Shown: positions 12,758 to 64,000 of the stretch, piece after piece
Layout of the letters: each line of letters begins with the position of its first letter
Numbering within the stretch: position 1 is the stretch's first letter
NCBI RefSeq assembly: GCF_006345805.1
Contig: NC_043004.1
Coordinates: 104,594,001-104,658,000, forward strand
Length of the DNA: 64,000 nucleotides
Origin: Octopus sinensis
Taxonomy: Eukaryota
Reading direction: 5' to 3'
Position numbers and translations under genes: made by a program
The notes under the pieces: generated by a model
Told to the model about the DNA's origin: nothing
Seen by the model: the letters and a program-made list of their open reading frames with translations, nothing else
Databases searched by the model: none

Positions 12758-12803
12758 ATTGCAACCACCACCACCACCACCACCACCACTACTACTGCTG
12801 CTG

Positions 12804-12839
<36 letters not shown>

Positions 12840-12875
12840 TTACTACCACCAGCACCACCACCACAACCACCACCG

Positions 12876-12931
<56 letters not shown>

Positions 12932-12961
12932 ACTACTACTGCTGCTGCTACTACTGCTACA

Positions 12962-13041
<80 letters not shown>
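12758..13041. repeat. Compound trinucleotide microsatellite (CCA/CTA/CTG)n
   Basis: Directly visible; a similar (CTA/CCA)n tract lies at ~23875-24053. Confidence 0.95.
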
Positions 13042-27984: not shown

Positions 27985-28256
27985 GCGTGTGTGTGTGTGT
28001 GTGTGCGTTTATGTGTTTATGTGTTTGTGTATGAATTCATTGTGTTTAAATTTTGTGTATGTATATGCAAGTTGATGTGCTTACGTATATGTGAATTGCA
28101 CCAGTTGAATACATGTGTGTGCATGTTTACTTTAAAAAAAAATATGTGAATTTGCACGTATGTGTATATATACGTGGAAAACGACCGCGATTTCTAGAAC
28201 TACGTGTAATATACTTTTTTGTATATATAATGTTTATTAACAGCTGCGTGTGTGCA

Positions 28257-28287
<31 letters not shown>

Positions 28288-28545
28288 TTATGTGTTTATG
28301 TGTTTGTGTATGAATTCATTGTGTTTAAATTTTGTGTATGTATATGCAAGTTGATGTGCTTACGTATATGTGAATTGCACCAGTTGAATACATGTGTGTG
28401 CATGTTTACTTTAAAAAAAAATATGTGAATTTGCACGTATGTGTATATATACGTGGAAAACGACCGCGATTTCTAGAACTACGTGTAATATACTTTTTTG
28501 TATATATAATGTTTATTAACAGCTGCGTGTGTGCATGTGTGTGTG
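27985..28545 (+). repeat. Near-perfect 279-bp tandem duplication bounded by (TG)n tracts
   Basis: Identical ORF starts at 28113 and 28392 (offset 279); the sequences read identical apart from TG tract length. Confidence 0.9.
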
Positions 28546-28658
28546 CATGTGTGTGTGTGTGTGTGTGTGTGTGCGTGCGTCTTTTTTTATTTATTTATTT
28601 ATTTCGTATATTTTTTAACAGCTAATGTAATATGTATAACGCACTCGCTTGAAACGTG

Positions 28659-31061: not shown

Positions 31062-31669
31062 GTAAGCTTTTTTTTCCCTCTTCACTTTTTTTCTATATTT
31101 AAATTTTAAAAATAAATATCAAGTCTTGGGACTTGTTTTTACTACGTGAAATGTAGAAATCCTTGCCAACAGCTATTTTTTTTATATCTATTAATGGTCT
31201 ATAAATAGCTAATACGGTGTCGACAGCTTTATTTAGCACCGGACGAAACAAGTTTTCTGGTTTGTTCTGGAATCTTGAGAGTAAATATTCTCGTGACACT
31301 TTTATTATTCTATAGCTAACAGACCTACCCTGAGAACTTTTGCACGTGTTTTTATTTATTTTTATTAATTACGGTGATCTAATCACGTGCACGGCCTATT
31401 TTTTTTCTTAATATTCATCCCACCCCCTCTTTTCGCAGTTTGTAAGTTTTACACCTGCGGCTCACGGAATTCTTTTGAATGGCACTCTAACGAAAAATTA
31501 CCATTACTTTTTTTTAGTAGTGCGGTTCGCTACTCGAAAGGGGCCACTCGTGTCTGTTTATTATTATTTTTTTTTAATGTTGGTAATAGATTGCGGTTGT
31601 AATTTTAAGAATTATATCTACTTTGAACATTTAGCAAAAATACTTATAATTTTTTAAAATTTTTTACAG

Positions 31670-31883
31670 GGGTCCAGATTTTGTTCTGCTTTGCATTCTG
31701 CCAGTAGACCGGAACCAGTCCGTTATGGTCAGCATTCAACAGACTTTAGTTGAAGCCTTTTGTCGTGATAACGACATTAATCTTGTAAAAGTTGACAGCA
31801 CTGACAAATTGTCAGCACTTGTCAGATACGAGGATCCAAATGACAACGAGGATTATCGGGATTACTGCTGTGTACTGGTCCAG
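31670..31883 (+). CDS. GADD45: GADD45 coding exon 3 (GPDFVLLCILP...SIQQTLVEAFCRDNDINLVKVDS...DYCCVLVQ)
   Basis: Acceptor TTTACAG|G, donor CAG|GTAAGA; carries the GADD45/L7Ae signatures TLIQAFCCENDINILRV and DLHCVLV. Confidence 0.95.
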
Positions 31884-32149
31884 GTAAGAATCCATTTTTT
31901 ATATATATATATTTTTAATTTGTCTTATCAGTAGCAGTAAATTTTAAAAAAATAGAATAAAATAAACTAAGCCATCCTTGTTTAAATATAGTCAACATCA
32001 TTGTTTTAAAGTTCCAATTTAATCCTTAATTATTAACTGGTATAAAATTCGGAAGGCATCTAATATTGCAGGGGGCTAAATTTTAAACTTTAGAAGTTAT
32101 TATTCTTCCATCTTTTCTTAAATACAATTTTGCCATTTTCTTATGACAG

Positions 32150-43782: not shown

Positions 43783-45159
43783 ATGTATTGTGTGTATGTG
43801 TGTGTGTGCGTGTGTTTATGTGCATGTGCATGTATATGTATATATGCATGTATGCAGGTATGTATGTATGTTTGTATATGTATATTAGTATGGCTGTGTG
43901 TGTGTGTCTGTGAATGCAAATTTATATGAGCATGTTTGTACGTATGAATACAAACATGTCTGTTCTTTGAGGTTTCTTTCCCAGAAGCAAGTCCCTATCA
44001 ATGGAACTTAGATAACAAGGTAGTTATGTATGTATGCACGCATGTATGCATGCATGCATGTATGTATGTGTGTATGTATGTAGTTACGTATGTATGAATG
44101 TATATATGTATGCATGTGTGTGTATATGTACGTATGTACGTACGTATGTATGTATGTTTGTATGTATGTTTGTATGTATGTATGTATGTGTGCATGTATG
44201 TATGTGTGTATGTATGTATGTATATACGTATGTATATATGTATGTGTGTGTGTATGTATATATGCATGTATGTATGTATGTATGTATGTATGTCTGTGTG
44301 TGTGTATGTATGCATGTATGTATGTATGTATGTGTGTATGTATGTATGTATGTATGTATGTATGCATGTATGTATGTATGTATGCATGTGTGTGTATGTA
44401 TGTATGCATGTATATGTGATTGTGTATGGTCTGACCGTCGGTGACTAAACCGGCAACCTTACAAAGCCTGCTCGGTGAGGAGGGTAGATTTCACTGGACA
44501 AAAGCAAAATCTTTCTACGGGTGGATGACCTCAGTAAAGTCATCGGGTATCCAACAGCTGGGAGTGAGAGAGTCCTATTCTTTGCTTAGACATCTCCCTA
44601 GCAGAAGGAAAACTCTGATGCAACATCTGCGATTTGGTTTGCATCAGCGATGTTGACTAATTTTTCTTTATGGGCAAATGCATACGTTGTTTAGAGAATG
44701 GGATCGGCCCTATGCAACGCCTTTATTCACATTAAAAAATGCTTAAGGAACAGGCATTGCCTGACTTTCAGCATCTCTATTATATGCTGCATATTATGGC
44801 TGTCCGTTGCTGAAGTAAGCAAAATACTCAATGAAATATTCCATGATGGAATGAAGGTATGTGTCTGCGTGGGTAGTAAGCTCTTTGAGCAGCTGCTGCA
44901 AAAAGCACTGCCACCATTTATGCAAATGAGGGTAGGTCACAAGCGGAACTGAAAAGCTACATCCATGATGCTTGTAACTATCATGTATGTATATGTGTAT
45001 GTGTGTGTGTGTGTGTGTGTGTGAGTGTAGCTGAAAGTATATCTACGGTACTCCTTAACAATGGTCCAAAGATGACCTTTTCCTCTTGTATTTTTCTAAC
45101 AACATTGGTGTCCAAAGAGCAGCTGATTTCCACAACAGAACATATCTCATCCTAGAAAG

Positions 45160-46120
45160 TGTGTATGTATGTATGTATGTATGTATGTTTGTATGTATGT
45201 ATGTATGTATGTATGTATGCATGCATGTATGTATGTATGTATGTATGTATGTATGTATGTATGTATGTATGTGTGTATGTATGTATGTATGTATGTATGT
45301 ATGTATGTATGTGTGTGATGTATGTATGTATGTATGTATGTATGTATGTATGTATGTATGTATGTGTGTATGTATGTATGTATGCATGCATGCATGTATG
45401 TATGTATGTATGTATGTATGTAGTATGCATGCATGATGTATGTATGTATGTATGTATGTATGTGGTGTATGTATGTATGTATGTATGTATGGATGTATGT
45501 ATGTATGTATATATGTATGCATGCATGTATGTATGTATGTATGTATGTATGTGATGTATGGTGTATGTATGTATATGTATGTATGGTATGTATGTGTGTA
45601 TGTATGTATGTATGTATGTATGTATGTATGTATGTATGTGTGTTGTATGTATGTATGTATGCATGCATGTATGTATGTATGTATGCATGCATGTATGTAT
45701 TATGTATGTATGTATGTATGTATGTATGTATGTATGTATGTGTGTGTGTATGTATGTATGTATGTATGTATGTATGTATGTATGTATGTATGTATGTATG
45801 TATGTGTGTATGTATGTATGCATGTATGTATGTATGTATGTATGTATGTATGTATGTATGTATGCATATGTGTGTGTGTATGTTTGTATGTGTGTGTGTA
45901 TGTTTCCATGTGTGTCTGTGTGTGTGTATATGTATGTATGTATATGTGTACGTGTGTTTACTTGTGTGTGTATGTATGTATATATGTATGCGTGTGTTTG
46001 TTTGTGTGTGTGTATGTATGTATGTGTGTGTGTGTGTTTGTATGTGTGTCTATGTCTGTGTGTGTATGTATGCATGCATATATGTGTCCATGTGTTTGTT
46101 TGTGTGTGTGTGTATGTATG
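45160..46120. repeat. Long degenerate (TGTA)n/(TG)n microsatellite
   Basis: Directly visible; similar tracts at ~39471-39650 and ~44025-44415. Confidence 0.95.
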
Positions 46121-47468: not shown

Positions 47469-47904
47469 TACATGCAGCTAGTTGCATGTATGTAGATAAG
47501 CTTTCGACTTGTTTGTTTATTTTTTTAATTTAGAATTAATTTTGACCGGCCACCACCTTTCTAGCAAGGTTGTGAAGGAAACCATTTTTTATCGTTAATC
47601 ATCCTATAAATCATAAGAAGGTCCAGAAGATTTTTATTTCCCCCAGATATCATTCGTAGCGTATAAATCATGGAGCTGATTTCTCACCCCCAGAACCGAA
47701 GTTTAATTATAGTTTTTGTTCCAGATGAGTTGCTATGTATCCTGATGATCCAATACTGTGTATGAAACTGCGTCTTGTGTATTGAATTTGAAAACTCCTT
47801 ATCAGCGGTCCTTATGTATGTATGTATGTATGTATGTATCTATGTATATGTATGTACGTATCTATCTATGTATATGTATGTATGTATGTATGCATGTATG
47901 TATG

Positions 47905-48312
47905 TATGGAGAACTTATGAATGGAAGGAGACTCCGGCAGAAACCAAGGCTGCGATTTAAGGACTGTGTTAAGTCCTCGTTACAGGCCTTTGATATGCAG
48001 GACACTGACTGGGAGAACAATGCCTGTCATCGCCACAGATGGAGGAAGCAGGTTAAGGAGGGGATCGACACTTTTGAGAGAGCACGTATCCAGCATGAAG
48101 AACTTAAGCGAGCTGCGCGAAAGCGCACGGCTCATATAGTGAATGGGGAAAGCTTGGTCTGCAATGTTTGCAGTCGTGTATGCTTGTCAAGAGCAGGGCT
48201 CATTAGCCACCAACGGAGCCGCAAATGCAAAATATAAGTTAGTCCTAGAGCGCACAATGTTCCTGAAGGTCGGCAATGGTCTTCCTCGGTCACGAGTGGA
48301 CGGCCATCATGT
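47905..48312 (+). mobile_element. 5'-truncated RTE-clade LINE 3' end with C-terminal C2H2-like finger, inside a (TGTA)n tract
   Basis: YGELMNGRRLRQKPRLRFKDCVKSSL...WENNACHRHRWRKQV...CNVCSRVCLSRAGLISHQRSRKC; TATG repeats on both sides. Confidence 0.8.
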
Positions 48313-49065: not shown

Positions 49066-50338
49066 CAGGATGTCCCAGAAAGAGAGTGACCCATGTTTAA
49101 TACTCTTTCTAAAGCCTATCAGTTCGGATAATATAATCTACATTTTACATAAAGATTTGCATGTGTCTTTTGTTCATGTGTCTATTGTTTCGTTCGTCTG
49201 TAACAGGTTTGTAAAAATACATGGTGTTGAAAGCAAAAAGGGACCAGATTGTCCCTTTAAAAACAGCTGGAGGGAACAACAGGGACATAACAAAACACTT
49301 GAACGGGTGCTGTAAAACAGTGTTCAATACCTGGAAACGATATATGGAGTCCGCTACTACCTCCAGCATGCCAATTCCTGGTAGGAAACGATCAATTCGT
49401 ACCAAACAAACTGTTGAAGTTGTGAAGAAGTGAATGAACCGAAATCCCCGTCGGAGTGCATGAAAAACTGCAATAGCTCTTGATGTTTCGCAATCGTCAA
49501 TGCACAGGATTTTTGAAGAGGATTTAAAGCTAACTGCATGCAAGAAACAAACCCGGCAGTTAATTTCAGCAGCTTCCAAAAAGAAACGGTTCGAGAGGGG
49601 AAAAACCATGTTAGCTGAGACGAAGCGTCCCACTAACAAAGTGTTGATCTGATCCGTCCGACGAGATCTTCACCGTGGAGATAGCTACCAACAGACAGAA
49701 TGACAGGCTTTATGCACGCAATGCAGGAGACTTGCCCGAAGGTAGCAGGCATCATTTACGCCGTCAAAAGCCAGCTTCACTCATGGTGTGGGCTGCAGTT
49801 GCATCTGATGGGTCCAAGTCTCACTTGATCTTCATCAATGTTGGTGTCAAGGTCAACAATGAAGTTCACGTGAAAATGTTGGATAAGAAAGTGTTACCTC
49901 GGGTCACAAAAACCTTTGGTGACCGTTACATATTCACTCAAGGCGGGGCTCTAGCCCACACATCCAATTTGACACTGAGTTGGTGCAAAGAGCATTTCAG
50001 CGGTTTTGGGGACAAGATGATATGGCCTCCCTCAATCTCATGAGCTTTGCCATCTGGCCCATCTTAGAGAGTAATGTTTCTGCTCGCTCCTATTCAAATG
50101 TGTCAGAATTGAAGAAAGCTCTTCTGTCTTTATGGGTCATGTTGGATGAAGAGGTGGTACGGCGCTCAAGCAACGCAGTGACACTCGCTTGCAGGCTATG
50201 ATCAAGGCTGAAGGTGATCGTTACTGCAATGGATTGACAATCTACATTAGAACATAAGTGCCAGATTTTCTTACCTCCCTTAAGTTTACTTTGAATAATT
50301 AAGAAATATCAATGAGTAATTCTTTCTGAGACACCCTG
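49066..50338 (+). mobile_element. Full-length degraded Tc1/mariner transposon, maT/DD37D-like (1273 bp)
   Basis: TA TSDs (49064-65, 50339-40); TIRs CAGGATGTCCCAGAAAGA / (rc) CAGGGTGTCTCAGAAAGA. The transposase starts at ATG 49221 and has SDE, MVWAAV, FTQGGALAH and WPPS motifs, with stops, frameshifts and a deletion in the SPDLNP box. Confidence 0.9.
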
Positions 50339-56359: not shown

Positions 56360-56459
56360 NNNNNNNNNNNNNNNNNNNNNNNNNNNNNNNNNNNNNNNNN
56401 NNNNNNNNNNNNNNNNNNNNNNNNNNNNNNNNNNNNNNNNNNNNNNNNNNNNNNNNNNN
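56360..56459. other. Assembly gap (100 N)
   Basis: Run of N. Confidence 1.
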
Positions 56460-59790: not shown

Positions 59791-60763
59791 GTGCTACCAG
59801 ATCGTACTGACCGTTGACTGAGTTTTTCTTGCCCTCCATCTGTAAACTTTTGTATTCACTTGGTTCGGTTTTGTCCCACATTCTTCTATATTTGTTCTTG
59901 ATGGTTCTTATGATGTCGTTGACTCTCGTGTGCTGTCGAATCCAGGCGGTGGTTTTCTTGTAATCAGATTATCTGAGCGAATACTGGTGAAATATTCTTG
60001 TTATAAAATTCAGTAAGGTCTGAACATAGCAGACCAGATTTAATGCACATTACTTGAAATTAATTAACCGGCTCTTATTAATATAATGTTAAAGATTAGT
60101 GAAAAGGAAAGCGTCAATGAAGACCTGATGAAAAATCTACAGTTACTCTCATCTAGAATATAATTTTTGATTTCCACCTATAATTATTGGAACACTTAGA
60201 TATGTGATTATCTTAGTACGAAATCTTGAAGAGCTACGTTTCTCAAAACTATCAAAGGCGTTGTCGGAATGTGTAAAACCTTCGAGAAAATTTAATAAAA
60301 GCCATATACGCAAAGACATCCATGCCTGCAGACGCGTATGCATGCGCATTTATATGCGTATTCATACGTGCATATGCGTGTATAAGTATAAGAATTCCTG
60401 TGACGAACCAGGGTCCTGTCCAAGGATGAAAAGAAACGCCAGAGAAACCGGGAAAGCGAATATATATCCCATACGGAGTAAGAATGTGAACTAAACATAT
60501 GTATACATGTACACTTACATACAAGTACATACATACATAATACATACATAATTACTCTGTTGATATTGTTAAAATTCCAATGACAGCGCCTTGTTTCAAG
60601 GCTACAAACCGACTTTTTTTTTCCATTGACGAATGTTTTAAAAAAATAAACCAGGAAAACATACACACACTCACACACGAATTCATGCTAGCGCACGCAC
60701 ACGCACATACTCATACACACTCACTTACACACTCACTCACTCACTCACTCACTCACTCACACA

Positions 60764-60798
<35 letters not shown>

Positions 60799-61012
60799 TC
60801 ACACACACACACACACTCACTCACAACACACACACACACACACACACTCACTCACACACACACACACACACACACATTCACTCACACACACACACACTCA
60901 CTCACACACACACACACACACACACTCACACACACACACACACACACACTCACACACACACACACACACACACTCACTCACTCACTCACTCACTCACCAC
61001 CACACACACACA

Positions 61013-61050
<38 letters not shown>

Positions 61051-61302
61051 TCACTCACGCACACACACACGCGCCACCTAATAGTGATTGCTTCAGCTGC
61101 CTCAGCTAAAAAAAAACAAAAGCAATCGTGAATATACAATATACATATATATAAATAAATAAATATAAGAGAGTGGTCACTATATGGCTCACTCTAGCAC
61201 CAGTTAATCCAAAAGGTTTCAACCACAAAGGTACATGTTTCCCATGAAAGTCAGTACGATTGTTAGCTCACACGGACAGGGCAAATAAAAAATAACAAAA
61301 TA

Positions 61303-61398
61303 CAGATTATTTTGGGACAATTGTTTCGCTATTAATGAATTAAATGTAATATTACTTACAAAAAAATCCACTTGTAGCTCCTCAGCCAAAACTATCTG
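61303..61398 (-). ncRNA. Type I hammerhead ribozyme, copy 1 (predicted cleavage 3' of C at 61316)
   Basis: Minus strand CAGAUAG-UUUUGG-CUGAGGA-GCUA[long extension]UAGC-GAAA-CAAUUG-UC^CCAAAA-UAAUCUG. Confidence 0.85.
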
Positions 61399-61827
61399 GA
61401 CGAAATCCACTCAATCGCACGCCAGATTTTACCATAACGATAATACGCGTGTGGTTCAATTGATTACATCCGACGTTATAATTCAAATGCCCCAACTAAC
61501 AGCGCGCCAAATTTTCACGGAAAACAAATACAGCATTTAGAAATAAATGCAGCATAATTATAATTAATAATAAGGGTGAGAGAATTAGATACTAATTTAA
61601 TAGTATATCTATTCTACACCAAGGCCTAGTGCTCCGAGAAACTGGATTATTATAATATTTTATAATATATTTATAATTTTACAAAATAAATATAAGAGAG
61701 TGGTCACTATATGGCTCACTCTAGCACCAGTAATCCAAAAGGTTTCAACCAAAAGATACATGTTTCCCATGAAAGTCAGTACGATTGTTAGCTCACACGG
61801 ACAGGGCAAATAAAAAATAACAAAATA

Positions 61828-61921
61828 CAGATTATTTGGGACAATTGTTTCGCTATTAATGAATAAATGTAAATTACTTTACAAAAAAATCCACTTGTAG
61901 CTCCTCAGCCAAAACTATCTG
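61828..61921 (-). ncRNA. Type I hammerhead ribozyme, copy 2 (C17 at 61840)
   Basis: Core intact; 1-nt indels in stem I and in the stem II extension. Confidence 0.8.
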
Positions 61922-62354
61922 GATGAAATCCACTCAATCGCACGCCAGATTTTACCATAACGATAAATACGCGTGTGGTTCAATTGATTACATCCGACGT
62001 TATAATTCAAATGCCCCAACTAACAGCGCGCCAAATTTTCACGGAAAACAAATACGCATTTAGAAATAAATGCAGCATAATTATAATTAATAATAAGGGT
62101 GAGAGAATTAGATACTAATTTAATAGTATATCTATTCTACACCAAGTGGCCTAGTGCTCCGAGAACCTGGATATATTAATATTTTATAATATATTATAAT
62201 ATTTTTACAAAATAAATATAAGAGAGTGGTCACTATATGGCTCACTCTAGCACCAGTTAATCCAAAAGGTTTCAACCACAAAGGTACATGTTTCCATGAA
62301 AGTCAGTACGATTGTTAGCTCACACGGACAGGGCAAATAAAAAATAACAAAATA

Positions 62355-62448
62355 CAGATTATTTGGGACAATTGTTTCGCTATTAATGAATTAAATGTAA
62401 TATACTTACAAAAAAATCCACTTGTAGCTCCTCAGCCAAAACTATCTG
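62355..62448 (-). ncRNA. Type I hammerhead ribozyme, copy 3 (C17 at 62367)
   Basis: Core intact; one base missing in stem I and one in the stem II extension. Confidence 0.8.
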
Positions 62449-62883
62449 GATGAAATCCACTCAATCGCACGCCAGATTTTACCATAACGATAAATACGCG
62501 TGTGGTTCAATTGATTACATCCGACGTTATAATTCAAATGCCCCAACTAACAGCGCGCCAAATTTTCACGGAAAACAAATACAGCATTTAGAAATAAATG
62601 CAGCATAATTATAATTAATTAATAAGGGTGAGAGAATTAGATACTAATTAATAGTATATCTATTCTACACCAAGTGGCCTAGTGCTCCGAGAAACCTGGA
62701 TTATTATAATATTTTATAATATATATAATATTTTTACAAAATAAATATAAGAGAGTGGTCACTATATGGCTCACTCTAGCACCAGTTAATCCAAAAGGTT
62801 TCAACCACAAAGATACATGTTCCCATGAAAGTCAGTACGATTGTTAGCTCACACGGACAGGGCAAATAAAAAATAACAAAATA

Positions 62884-62979
62884 CAGATTATTTTGGGACA
62901 ATTGTTTCGCTATTAATGAATTAAATGTAATATTACTTACAAAAAAATCCACTTGTAGCTCCTCAGCCAAAACTATCTG
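62884..62979 (-). ncRNA. Type I hammerhead ribozyme, copy 4 (C17 at 62897)
   Basis: Identical to the copy 1 motif. Confidence 0.85.
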
Positions 62980-63416
62980 GATGAAATCCACTCAATCGCA
63001 CGCCAGATTTTACCATAACGATAAATACGCGTGTGGTTCAATTGATTACATCCGACGTTATAATTCAAATGCCCCAACTAACAGCGCGCCAAATTTTCAC
63101 GGAAAACAAATACAGCATTTAGAAATAAATGCAGCATAATTATAATTAATTAATAAGGGTGAGAGAATTAGATACTAATTTAATAGTATATCTATTCTAC
63201 ACCAAGTGGCCTAGTGCTCCGAGAAACCTGGATTATTATAATATTTTATAATATATTATAATATTTTTACAAAATAAATATAAGAGAGTGGTCACTATAT
63301 GGCTCACTCTAGCACCAGTTAATCCAAAAGGTTTCAACCACAAAGGTACATGTTTCCCATGAAGTCAGTACGACTGTTAGCTCACACGGACAGGGCAAAT
63401 AAAAAATAACAAAATA

Positions 63417-63512
63417 CAGATTATTTTGGGACAATTGTTTCGCTATTAATGAATTAAATGTAATATTACTTACAAAAAAATCCACTTGTAGCTCCTCAGC
63501 CAAAACTATCTG
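63417..63512 (-). ncRNA. Type I hammerhead ribozyme, copy 5 (C17 at 63430)
   Basis: Identical to the copy 1 motif. Confidence 0.85.
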
Positions 63513-63950
63513 GATGAAATCCACTCAATCGCACGCCAGATTTTACCATAACGATAAATACGCGTGTGGTTCAATTGATTACATCCGACGTTATAATTCA
63601 AATGCCCCAACTAACAGCGCGCCAAATTTTCACGGAAAACAAATACAGCATTTAGAAATAAATGCAGCATAATTATAATTAATTAATAAGGGTGAGAGAA
63701 TTAGATACTAATTTAATAGTATATCTATTCTACACCAAGTGGCCTAGTGCTCCGAGAAACCTGGATTATTATAATATTTTATAATATATTATAATATTTT
63801 TACAAAAAAAATATAAGAGAGTGGTCACTATATGGCTCACTCTAGCACCAGTTAATCCAAAAGGTTTCAACCACAAAGATACATGTTTCCCATGAAAGTC
63901 AGTACGATTGTTAGCTCACACGGACAGGGCAAATAAAAAATAACAAAATA

Positions 63951-64000
63951 CAGATTATTTAGGGACAATTGTTTCGCTATTAATGAATTAAATGTAATAT
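63951..64000 (-). ncRNA. Type I hammerhead ribozyme, copy 6, truncated by the window edge (C17 at 63964)
   Basis: GAAA-CAAUUG-UC half is present; one stem I substitution at 63961. Confidence 0.6.

What the first reader, a model, noticed from the sequence alone, without database searches (positions are those of the whole stretch)
61152..64000. Hammerhead-ribozyme tandem array: a ~530-nt retrozyme-like (self-cleaving, probably circular RNA) system in an octopus-like genome
Seen: each ~530-bp unit reads on the minus strand CAGAUAG-UUUUGG-CUGAGGA-GCUA...UAGC-GAAA-CAAUUG-UC^CCAAAA-UAAUCUG. It has all conserved core nucleotides (C3-A9, G12-A14, A15.1-U16.1) and a GUC cleavage triplet. Stem I is ~12 bp with one A-A mismatch. 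Stem II is 4 bp, extended by two further helices (AGUGGAUU/AAUUCAUU and UGUAA/UUACA). Stem III is only ~2 bp as a monomer but is an 8-nt palindrome (ACAAUUGU). Predicted cut sites are 61316, 61840, 62367, 62897, 63430 and 63964, giving monomers of 524-534 nt. There is no credible ORF. Established: tandem type I hammerheads with short palindromic stem III define animal non-LTR retrozymes (newt satellite 2, Schistosoma Sm-alpha, cricket pDo500, coral and mussel retrozymes). These cleave via dimeric folding and yield monomeric linear and circular RNAs. Inference: this is such an element. I do not know of a described cephalopod family of this size or with this long stem II.
Basis: partly seen in the sequence, partly recalled or inferred. 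Interest (0 to 1): 0.95.

Follow-up and report, generated by a model that had tools for sequence, protein, structure and literature searches.

The report
Hammerhead-ribozyme tandem repeat (retrozyme) in octopus-like DNA
The window ends in a head-to-tail array of ~530-bp non-coding repeats, each carrying a complete self-cleaving hammerhead ribozyme on the minus strand; it fits the animal "retrozyme" elements already known to make small circular RNAs, so it is real but a new example of a known kind.

Summary
Window ~61157-64000 (minus strand, running off the window end) holds five complete units of 534/533/530/527/524 nt plus two partial ones, 97.3-99.6% identical. Each has a type I hammerhead with the full catalytic core and a GUC cleavage site at exactly the predicted positions. 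A strict descriptor finds it only in the array and never in 300 simulated windows.

Rfam Hammerhead_1 matches end to end, but at 28.5 bits (cut-off 34) and only in a 121-nt slice. A 39-nt insertion in loop 2 hides it from normal annotation.

Helix III is unstable as a hairpin (+2.4 kcal/mol) but forms an 8-bp duplex between two copies (-6.4). The 533-nt minus-strand monomer is unusually self-paired (z = -8.2). GC is 33%, and there is no conserved ORF.

All sequence-level features of metazoan non-LTR retrozymes are met. Transcription, cleavage, circularisation and mobilisation by Penelope-like elements are inferred only, because no relatives could be retrieved from any accessible collection.

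The unit size is within the published range (51-972 bp). Type I hammerheads and Penelope elements are already reported in cephalopod genomes. Verdict: new member of a known kind, with an unusual extended helix II; moderate interest.

The parts
61157..64000 (-). Tandem array of the ~530-bp hammerhead-bearing unit. It holds 5 complete monomers, a 37-nt piece cut by the window end, and a 3'-terminal partial unit of ~159-180 nt. The 5' side continues beyond the window.
63430..63963 (-). Monomer 1 (534 nt, from the base after one GUC cut to the next C17). Its 5' stem I strand carries an A>U change (CCUAAAU).
62897..63429 (-). Monomer 2 (533 nt), the reference copy. Minus-strand RNA folds at -152.1 kcal/mol, z = -8.23.
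62367..62896 (-). Monomer 3 (530 nt)
61840..62366 (-). Monomer 4 (527 nt), the most divergent copy (about 97.3-97.7% identical to the others).
61316..61839 (-). Monomer 5 (524 nt)
63417..63512 (-). Hammerhead ribozyme copy, intact: stem I 5' strand 63512-63500, core + helix II + helix III 63499-63430, cut after C at 63430, stem I 3' strand 63429-63417. Rfam Hammerhead_1 scores 28.5 bits, E = 1.4e-5, model positions 1-45 of 45.
62884..62979 (-). Hammerhead ribozyme copy, intact; cut after 62897.
62355..62448 (-). Hammerhead copy with an intact core but a 1-nt deletion in the stem I 3' strand (CCAAAU); cut after 62367.
61828..61921 (-). Hammerhead copy with an intact core, a 1-nt deletion in the stem I 3' strand, and indels in distal helix II (UGUAAA/UUUACA); cut after 61840.
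61303..61398 (-). Hammerhead ribozyme copy, intact; cut after 61316.
63951..64000 (-). 3' part of a sixth hammerhead, cut off by the window end: distal helix II, GAAA, helix III, GUC at 63964, and a stem I 3' strand with an A>U change.
60694..61070 (.). (CA/TG)n-rich microsatellite ~85 bp beyond the array edge. This is context only. The junction itself lies in an AT-rich (AAAT)n-like stretch with microhomology to the unit.

Best explanation
This is a genomic array of a non-autonomous, non-coding retroelement of the animal 'non-LTR retrozyme' type.

Proposed mechanism:
1. The minus strand is transcribed as a multimer.
2. Each unit folds a type I hammerhead. Its own helix III (2 bp + AAUU) is too weak, so neighbouring copies pair their palindromic ACAAUUGU segments into a shared 8-bp helix III (a 'double hammerhead').
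3. [quoted passage not shown]
4. The released ~533-nt monomer collapses into a compact branched rod. The 12-pair stem I holds the two ends side by side.
5. A host RNA ligase (RtcB type) closes it into a circular RNA.
6. Reverse transcription of the circle, probably by a Penelope-like element enzyme, yields multimeric cDNA that integrates as a tandem array.

Shown here: the array, the complete ribozyme core and helices, the energetic preference for dimeric helix III, the strongly self-paired minus-strand monomer, the absence of coding capacity, and the low GC.

Inferred from the published family: transcription, cleavage, ligation, circularity and the mobilising enzyme.
For: - Complete core and cut sites in all five full copies.
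- End-to-end match to Rfam Hammerhead_1, E = 1.4e-5 in a 121-nt slice.
- 0 descriptor hits in 300 simulated windows against 3 strict hits in the array, and none elsewhere in the window or on the plus strand.
- The MFE fold recovers stems I and II unconstrained, z = -3.63.
- Helix III hairpin is +2.4 kcal/mol against -6.4 for the self-duplex. Cofolding two ribozyme domains forms the 8-bp intermolecular helix III and gains ~5.8 kcal/mol over two monomers.
- Helix I has 6 proximal bp and helix II has 4 bp, the canonical metazoan geometry (PMC4209133).
- The monomer RNA folds at -152.1 kcal/mol, z = -8.23, with stem I closing the molecule. The plus strand reaches only -118.5 (z = -4.65), and 18 of 177 pairs are G-U, so the structure is strand-specific.
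- GC is 33%.
- No ORF longer than 71 aa, and none conserved between units.
- Near-identical units fit a recent multimeric insertion.
- Family features and life cycle come from PMC7229834, PMC7761336 and 10.64898/2026.07.22.740005.
- Cephalopods carry Penelope elements and Rfam hammerhead hits (PMC8557442, PMC6962438).
Against: - No relative was found anywhere, so there is no covariation or conservation evidence and no copy-number estimate.
- No expression data are available.
- The Rfam score is below the gathering cut-off, and the hit vanishes in slices of 651 nt or more.
- The ~47-nt extension of helix II replaces the usual loop 2, so the standard loop 1-loop 2 tertiary contact cannot be assumed.
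- Position 7 is G, read from the core CUGAGGA. That G is uncommon at this position is from memory.
- Two of the five complete copies, plus the partial one, have a defect in stem I.
- No Penelope-like reverse transcriptase or GIY-YIG ORF was seen among the window's ORFs scanned.
- Only one array end is in the window, and it is not at the cleavage site. No target-site duplication can be assessed.
Confidence: 0.75

Rival explanations
1. Ordinary satellite DNA that carries a relic hammerhead. On this reading the array is maintained and homogenised by unequal crossing-over or gene conversion. It is not, or is no longer, processed into circular RNA or retrotransposed.
For: - Only one locus was seen, and there are no other copies in 61 kb of flank.
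- Three of the six stem I 3' strands carry a defect.
- No autonomous partner was found in the window.
- The array end is not at a ribozyme boundary.
- High unit identity is equally expected from satellite homogenisation.
Against: - The core is perfect in all five copies, and three copies are intact throughout.
- The whole 533-nt unit, not just the ribozyme, is far more structured than shuffles, and more so on the ribozyme strand. Neutral satellite DNA would not be expected to show this.
- The classic 'satellite' hammerheads (newt satellite 2) turned out to be expressed as circular RNAs (PMC7229834).
- The defects are 1-nt homopolymer deletions that may be assembly errors.
Confidence: 0.15
2. 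Tandemised terminal repeat (pLTR) fragment of a Penelope-like element. On this reading it is a piece of an autonomous element's non-coding end rather than an independent non-autonomous family.
For: - Penelope-like elements carry type I hammerheads in their pLTRs and form partial tandems (PMC4209133, PMC8557442).
- In Xenopus, retrozymes are sister to pLTRs (10.64898/2026.07.22.740005).
- Penelope-like elements (Naiad clade) show an insertion bias for microsatellites (PMC8557442), and a long (CA)n tract lies ~85 bp from the array edge.
Against: - There is no reverse transcriptase or GIY-YIG ORF in or next to the array or among the window ORFs scanned.
- PLE hammerheads are 'minimal' variants with helix I of 4-5 bp, helix II of 7-8 bp and little or no helix III (PMC4209133). 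This one has the canonical 6/4/2 geometry.
- The 530-bp period has one ribozyme per unit, unlike the ~3-kb spacing of PLE tandems.
- Microsatellites are everywhere in this window (109 TRF rows), so the adjacency is weak evidence.
Confidence: 0.07
3. Chance resemblance or assembly artefact. On this reading the motif is fortuitous in AT-rich repeat DNA, or the array is a mis-assembly.
For: - The Rfam score is below the gathering threshold.
- The deletion-biased differences between units and the monotonic fall in unit length (534 to 524) suggest long-read consensus errors.
- A 100-N scaffold gap lies 4.7 kb away.
Against: - 0 descriptor hits in 300 simulated windows.
- All 11 invariant core positions, three helices in the right order and a palindromic helix III occur together.
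- Assembly errors could alter copy number or homopolymers but cannot create the motif.
Confidence: 0.02

Closest known systems
Metazoan non-LTR retrozymes (Cervera & de la Pena 2020, PMC7229834): coral Acropora 220-240 bp, mussel Mytilus, axolotl Rtz_331/353
   Same: - One type I hammerhead per unit in head-to-tail tandem arrays.
- Low GC.
- No ORF, LTR, PBS or PPT.
- Weak helix III (2 bp + tetraloop, as in invertebrate and HHR_Amex2 motifs).
- Predicted highly self-paired monomer.
- Arrays of a few units (75% of families have at most 7 units, 10.64898/2026.07.22.740005).
   Different: - The unit of ~530 bp is larger than the 150-450 bp first described, though inside the 51-972 bp range of the 2026 preprint.
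- Loop 2 is replaced by a ~47-nt two-helix extension.
- The host is an octopod, for which I found no description.
- No expression or cleavage data exist here.
Newt satellite 2 / amphibian HHR_Amex1 hammerheads (active only as dimers; Forster 1988, cited in PMC4209133)
   Same: - Tandem genomic repeat.
- Type I topology.
- Helix III too weak as a monomer, with a palindromic loop that lets two copies build a shared helix III.
   Different: - The amphibian helix III is 1 bp + tetraloop; here it is 2 bp + AAUU, giving an 8-bp duplex.
- Amphibian units are 330-350 bp with the standard 6-nt loop 2.
Rfam RF00163 Hammerhead_1
   Same: Full-length alignment to model positions 1-45. All core positions match. 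The loop 2 flanks CA...AAUA align to the consensus loop CAAAUA.
   Different: The score of 28.5 bits is below the gathering score of 34 because of a 39-nt insertion in loop 2. The hit is not reported at default settings or in slices of 651 nt or more.
Minimal hammerheads of Penelope-like elements and Terminons (PMC4209133)
   Same: Type I hammerheads, thought to act as dimers and associated with retroelements. These are the likely mobilising partner family.
   Different: PLE motifs lack a real helix III, have a short helix I (4-5 bp) and a 7-8 bp helix II, and sit in the pLTRs of elements with a reverse transcriptase/GIY-YIG ORF. None of this applies here.
Schistosoma Sm-alpha and cave-cricket pDo500 hammerhead repeats
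   Same: Non-coding invertebrate repeats with canonical type I hammerheads (named from established knowledge, and in PMC7229834's introduction).
   Different: Not compared at sequence level here. The units are shorter and have a standard loop 2.

Membership tests
Hammerhead ribozyme, type I | Invariant core: C3 U4 G5 A6 N7 G8 A9, G12 A13 A14, A15.1-U16.1 pair, G10.1-C11.1 pair, H17 (not G) before the cut | tested here: met
   CUGAGGA / G-C closing helix II / GAAA ... U-C^ in all five complete copies; the Rfam alignment covers all core columns.
Hammerhead ribozyme, type I | Three helices in type I order, with helix I open and helices II and III closed | tested here: met
   Order: stem I 5' strand - core - helix II hairpin - GAAA - helix III hairpin - C17 - stem I 3' strand. 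The MFE fold recovers stems I and II; the Rfam structure line agrees.
Hammerhead ribozyme, type I | Score at or above the Rfam RF00163 gathering threshold (34 bits) | tested here: not met
   28.5 bits, E = 1.4e-5, only in a 121-nt slice. There was no hit at gathering on the window, nor in the 3-kb and 651-nt slices. The shortfall coincides with a 39-nt insertion in loop 2.
Hammerhead ribozyme, type I | Loop 1-loop 2 tertiary contact with 6-bp helix I and 4-bp helix II (canonical metazoan form, PMC4209133) | tested here: inconclusive
   The helix lengths fit: 6 Watson-Crick bp, then G-U/A-A in helix I, and a 4-bp helix II. However, loop 2 is a 2x2 internal loop (CA/AA) leading into a further ~43-nt hairpin, so the contacts cannot be read from sequence.
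Hammerhead ribozyme, type I | Mg2+-dependent self-cleavage after H17 | not testable with these tools
   Needs in vitro transcription of monomer and dimer constructs.
Metazoan non-LTR retrozyme | [quoted passage not shown] | tested here: met
   At least 5.4 units of 524-534 bp, with one ribozyme each. This is within 51-972 bp (10.64898/2026.07.22.740005) and above the 150-450 bp of PMC7229834.
Metazoan non-LTR retrozyme | Low GC (<45-50%) | tested here: met
   Unit 32.8%, array 32.7%, rest of the window 38.6%.
Metazoan non-LTR retrozyme | Non-coding and non-autonomous: no ORF and no LTRs | tested here: met
   The longest ORF is 71 aa (GTG start), with frames not preserved between units. ORF translations have no homologues. 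The unit is a simple direct repeat.
Metazoan non-LTR retrozyme | Weak helix III (1-2 bp) capped by a small palindromic loop, allowing dimeric activity | tested here: met
   A-U and C-G pairs + AAUU. The hairpin is +2.4 kcal/mol; the ACAAUUGU self-duplex is -6.4. The cofold of two domains forms it.
Metazoan non-LTR retrozyme | Monomer RNA predicted to be stable and highly self-paired | tested here: met
   -152.1 kcal/mol, z = -8.23, ~66-68% of bases paired, long-range helices of 9 and 13 bp, and stem I closing the molecule.
Metazoan non-LTR retrozyme | Expressed as monomeric linear and circular RNAs | not testable with these tools
   No transcriptome access. The protein-collection route to transcript contigs found nothing.
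Metazoan non-LTR retrozyme | Multiple dispersed genomic arrays, sometimes with target-site duplications | not testable with these tools
   There is one locus, and its 5' end lies outside the window. No other copy occurs in the window, and no eukaryotic genome collection was available.
Metazoan non-LTR retrozyme | Co-occurrence with Penelope-like elements in the same genome | not tested
   None was seen among the window ORFs scanned. The literature reports PLEs in cephalopods (PMC8557442, PMC6962438).
Autonomous Penelope-like element | ORF encoding a reverse transcriptase plus a GIY-YIG endonuclease between hammerhead-bearing pLTRs | tested here: not met
   No ORF longer than 71 aa in the unit. 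There were no RVT or GIY-YIG Pfam hits in 20 window ORFs.
Viroid-like / HDV-like replicating circular RNA | Ribozymes in both polarities (or a delta-antigen ORF) and no genomic DNA copy | tested here: not met
   It is present as a DNA tandem array. There is no ribozyme on the plus strand and no ORF.

The most novel reading that the evidence does not exclude
This may be the founding example of an octopod-specific retrozyme family whose hammerhead has swapped the usual loop 2 for a long two-helix arm. In that case the tertiary contact that activates the ribozyme would be made by an internal loop, or dispensed with. Such elements, and their ~530-nt circular RNAs, would also be systematically missed by Rfam-based annotation of cephalopod genomes.
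Probability: 0.35. Interest if true: 0.5.

Novelty: new member of a known kind. Interest (0 to 1): 0.35.

Why it matters
If confirmed, it extends genome-encoded ribozyme circular RNAs to cephalopods. It also gives a natural type I hammerhead with a large insertion in loop 2, a useful test of how much the loop-loop contact matters in vivo.

In practice, it shows that standard Rfam annotation can miss real hammerheads. The hit appears only in a 121-nt slice and falls below the cut-off, so retrozyme counts in molluscan genomes may be underestimates. It does not open a new class of biology.

Tried and rejected
- **Rfam at gathering on the whole window, and at E <= 10 on 3 kb and 651 nt:** no hammerhead hit. 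Only a 121-nt slice revealed it.
- **TRF:** misses the array because its longest period is 500.
- **Relatives by exact ORF look-up:** none in the 15-billion-protein collection.
- **Relatives by homology:** the 71-aa ORF spanning the ribozyme and a 1091-aa six-frame concatenate of the unit both found nothing.
- **Relatives by DNA pattern:** metagenome and viral contigs gave 0 hits for the full pattern. Shorter 18-19-mers gave 4 hits, all in GC-rich prokaryote-like sequence with no hammerhead context, so they are chance matches.
- **Literature string search** for the ribozyme's 13-mers: nothing relevant.
- **Other copies of the unit in the window:** none.
- **tRNA-like or other Rfam families in the unit:** none.
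- **The sigma-70 promoter scan** is irrelevant for a eukaryote.
- **The flank next to the array** is unique in the window, so no host element could be defined.
- **Microsatellite adjacency as evidence for PLE-type targeting:** considered and set aside as too weak, because microsatellites are ubiquitous here.
- **First folding script:** it timed out and was rerun without the shuffle.
Full report
**1. Observation**

Reading the minus strand of 60600-64000 shows a long repeat. The direct-repeat finder places it at a period of 523-534 bp from ~61143 to the window end. Tandem Repeats Finder does not list it because its longest period is 500.

A regular-expression scan for a hammerhead core with a closed helix II finds five hits in the whole 64-kb window. 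All are on the minus strand and in register with the repeat. Cutting after each GUC gives monomers of 534, 533, 530, 527 and 524 nt.

Units are 97.3-99.6% identical. Nearly all differences are single-base deletions in short homopolymers, and unit length falls monotonically toward the array edge. This looks more like long-read consensus error than biology.

The array ends (3' in RNA sense) about 159-180 nt into a unit, at 61134-61157, inside an AT-rich stretch. Its other end is beyond the window.

**2. The ribozyme**

Each complete copy reads CAGAUAGUUUUGG / CUGAGGA / GCUA-CA-[AGUGGAUU-UUUU-UGUAA-GUAAUA-UUACA-UUU-AAUUCAUU]-AA-UAGC / GAAA / CAAUUG / UC^ / CCAAAAUAAUCUG.

All invariant positions are present: C3-A9, G12-A14, A15.1-U16.1, G10.1-C11.1 and C17.

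- **Helix I:** six Watson-Crick pairs, then G-U, an A-A mismatch, and five more pairs.
- **Helix II:** four pairs, then a 2x2 internal loop and two further helices.
- **Helix III:** two pairs closing AAUU, inside the palindrome ACAAUUGU.

Rfam's Hammerhead_1 model aligns end to end (positions 1-45) at 28.5 bits, E = 1.4e-5. It places a 39-nt insertion in loop 2, between CA and AAUA. This hit appears only when a 121-nt slice is searched. It is below the gathering score of 34 and absent from the 64-kb, 3-kb and 651-nt scans.

An unconstrained MFE fold of 106 nt recovers stem I and all three helix II segments (-25.4 kcal/mol, z = -3.63).

A strict descriptor (core, 4-bp helix II, A15.1-U16.1 plus one more pair, H17, 6/6 helix I) hits three copies. 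It gave no hit in 300 Markov-1 simulated windows on either strand. The other two complete copies fail only because one A is missing from the CCAAAA strand of stem I.

**3. Dimer dependence**

The monomeric helix III hairpin is unfavourable (+2.4 kcal/mol). Two ACAAUUGU segments form an 8-bp duplex at -6.4 kcal/mol. Cofolding two 106-nt ribozyme domains yields exactly that intermolecular helix III, at -56.6 kcal/mol against 2 x -25.4.

This is the 'double hammerhead' logic of the newt and other metazoan type I motifs (PMC4209133). That it operates here is inferred, not shown.

**4. The whole unit**

The 533-nt minus-strand monomer folds at -152.1 kcal/mol. Shuffles average -112.6 +/- 4.8, giving z = -8.23. 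Long-range helices (13 bp, 9 bp and others) join nt ~20-93 to ~220-373, and stem I closes the molecule so that the 5' and 3' ends abut.

The plus strand reaches only -118.5 kcal/mol (z = -4.65). Eighteen of the 177 pairs are G-U, so the structure favours the ribozyme strand. As a circle the monomer folds at -146.8 kcal/mol, with 68% of bases paired.

GC is 33%, against 38.6% for the rest of the window. The longest ORF is 71 aa, has a GTG start, and is not conserved between units. No tRNA-like or other Rfam family is present in the unit. There is no ribozyme on the plus strand.

**5. Surroundings and source**

No other copy of the unit exists in the window. The flank next to the array is unique.

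A (CA)n-rich microsatellite lies ~85 bp away. Microsatellites are everywhere in this window (109 TRF rows), so I give this no weight.

Twenty non-repetitive ORFs gave no reverse transcriptase or GIY-YIG hit.

A Tc1/mariner-like remnant at 49648-50040 has its named (NCBI) homologues only in Octopus sinensis (69%) and O. bimaculoides (68%); the other three hits are unnamed ENA or Logan contigs. This supports an octopod-like source.

**6. Relatives**

None could be obtained.

- Exact and homology look-ups of the unit's ORFs found nothing. This includes a six-frame concatenate designed to catch any frame called on transcript or genome contigs.
- DNA patterns in metagenome and viral contigs gave either nothing or four chance matches without hammerhead context.

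Covariation, copy number and expression therefore remain untested.

The only internal hint is copy 61908-61840. There, paired indels turn the distal helix UGUAA/UUACA into UGUAAA/UUUACA, which preserves pairing.

**7. Comparison with what is known**

The defining sequence-level features of metazoan non-LTR retrozymes are all met:

- tandem repeats with one type I hammerhead each;
- low GC;
- no ORF, LTR, PBS or PPT;
- weak palindromic helix III;
- a highly self-paired RNA.

These features come from PMC7229834 and PMC7761336.

The unit is larger than the 150-450 bp first reported. It lies inside the 51-972 bp range of a 2026 survey, which also finds that most families have at most seven units per array and derive from Penelope-like element pLTRs (10.64898/2026.07.22.740005).

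Cephalopods are already known to carry Penelope-like elements (PMC8557442, PMC6962438). The giant squid has 235 Rfam 'hammerhead 1' hits (PMC6962438).

I found no paper describing retrozymes in cephalopods or this sequence. What looks unusual is the long helix II arm replacing loop 2.

**8. Verdict**

- **Best explanation (about 0.75):** a retrozyme-type element whose minus-strand multimeric transcript self-cleaves through paired hammerheads into ~533-nt monomers. These are then ligated into circles and copied back into DNA.
- **Main rival (about 0.15):** a satellite carrying a relic ribozyme.

It is a new member of a known kind, and interest is moderate (0.35).

Noticed in passing
window 49648-50040 (+): Tc1/mariner-like transposase remnant. 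Its named (NCBI) homologues are only in Octopus sinensis (69% identity) and O. bimaculoides (68%); the other hits are unnamed ENA/Logan contigs. This points to an octopod-like source genome.
   Followed up: partly
window 31650-31931 (+): Exon-like open frame with a weak Ribosomal_L7Ae/Gadd45-family hit (E = 0.002, below the Pfam cut-off); possibly a GADD45-like gene.
   Followed up: no
window 47758-48237 (+): ORF resembling the C-terminal tail of a LINE-type retrotransposon protein, with a weak C2H2 zinc-finger hit.
   Followed up: no
window 27987-28565: A separate 279-bp tandem duplication (2.1 copies, 99% identical) that begins in a (GT)n tract.
   Followed up: no
window 61316-63963 (-): Unit length falls monotonically toward the array edge (534, 533, 530, 527, 524 nt). 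The differences are almost all 1-nt deletions in short homopolymers, which suggests long-read assembly error rather than real divergence.
   Followed up: partly
window 61855-61880 (-), distal helix II of the copy cut at 61840: Paired indels convert UGUAA/UUACA (5 bp) into UGUAAA/UUUACA (6 bp). This is a structure-preserving change, and the only covariation-like event seen.
   Followed up: partly
window 56360-56459: A run of 100 N (scaffold gap) lies 4.7 kb from the array.
   Followed up: no
whole window; e.g. 45162-46085, 44025-44413, 12788-13041, 60694-61070: Microsatellite density is extremely high (109 TRF rows), including a ~920-bp (TGTA)n tract and long (ACT)n, (TG)n and (TATG)n tracts.
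   Followed up: no
window 63410-63530 versus larger slices: The Rfam hammerhead hit is reported only in a 121-nt slice and disappears at 651 nt, 3 kb and 64 kb. The speed filters, not just the score, hide this ribozyme.
   Followed up: yes
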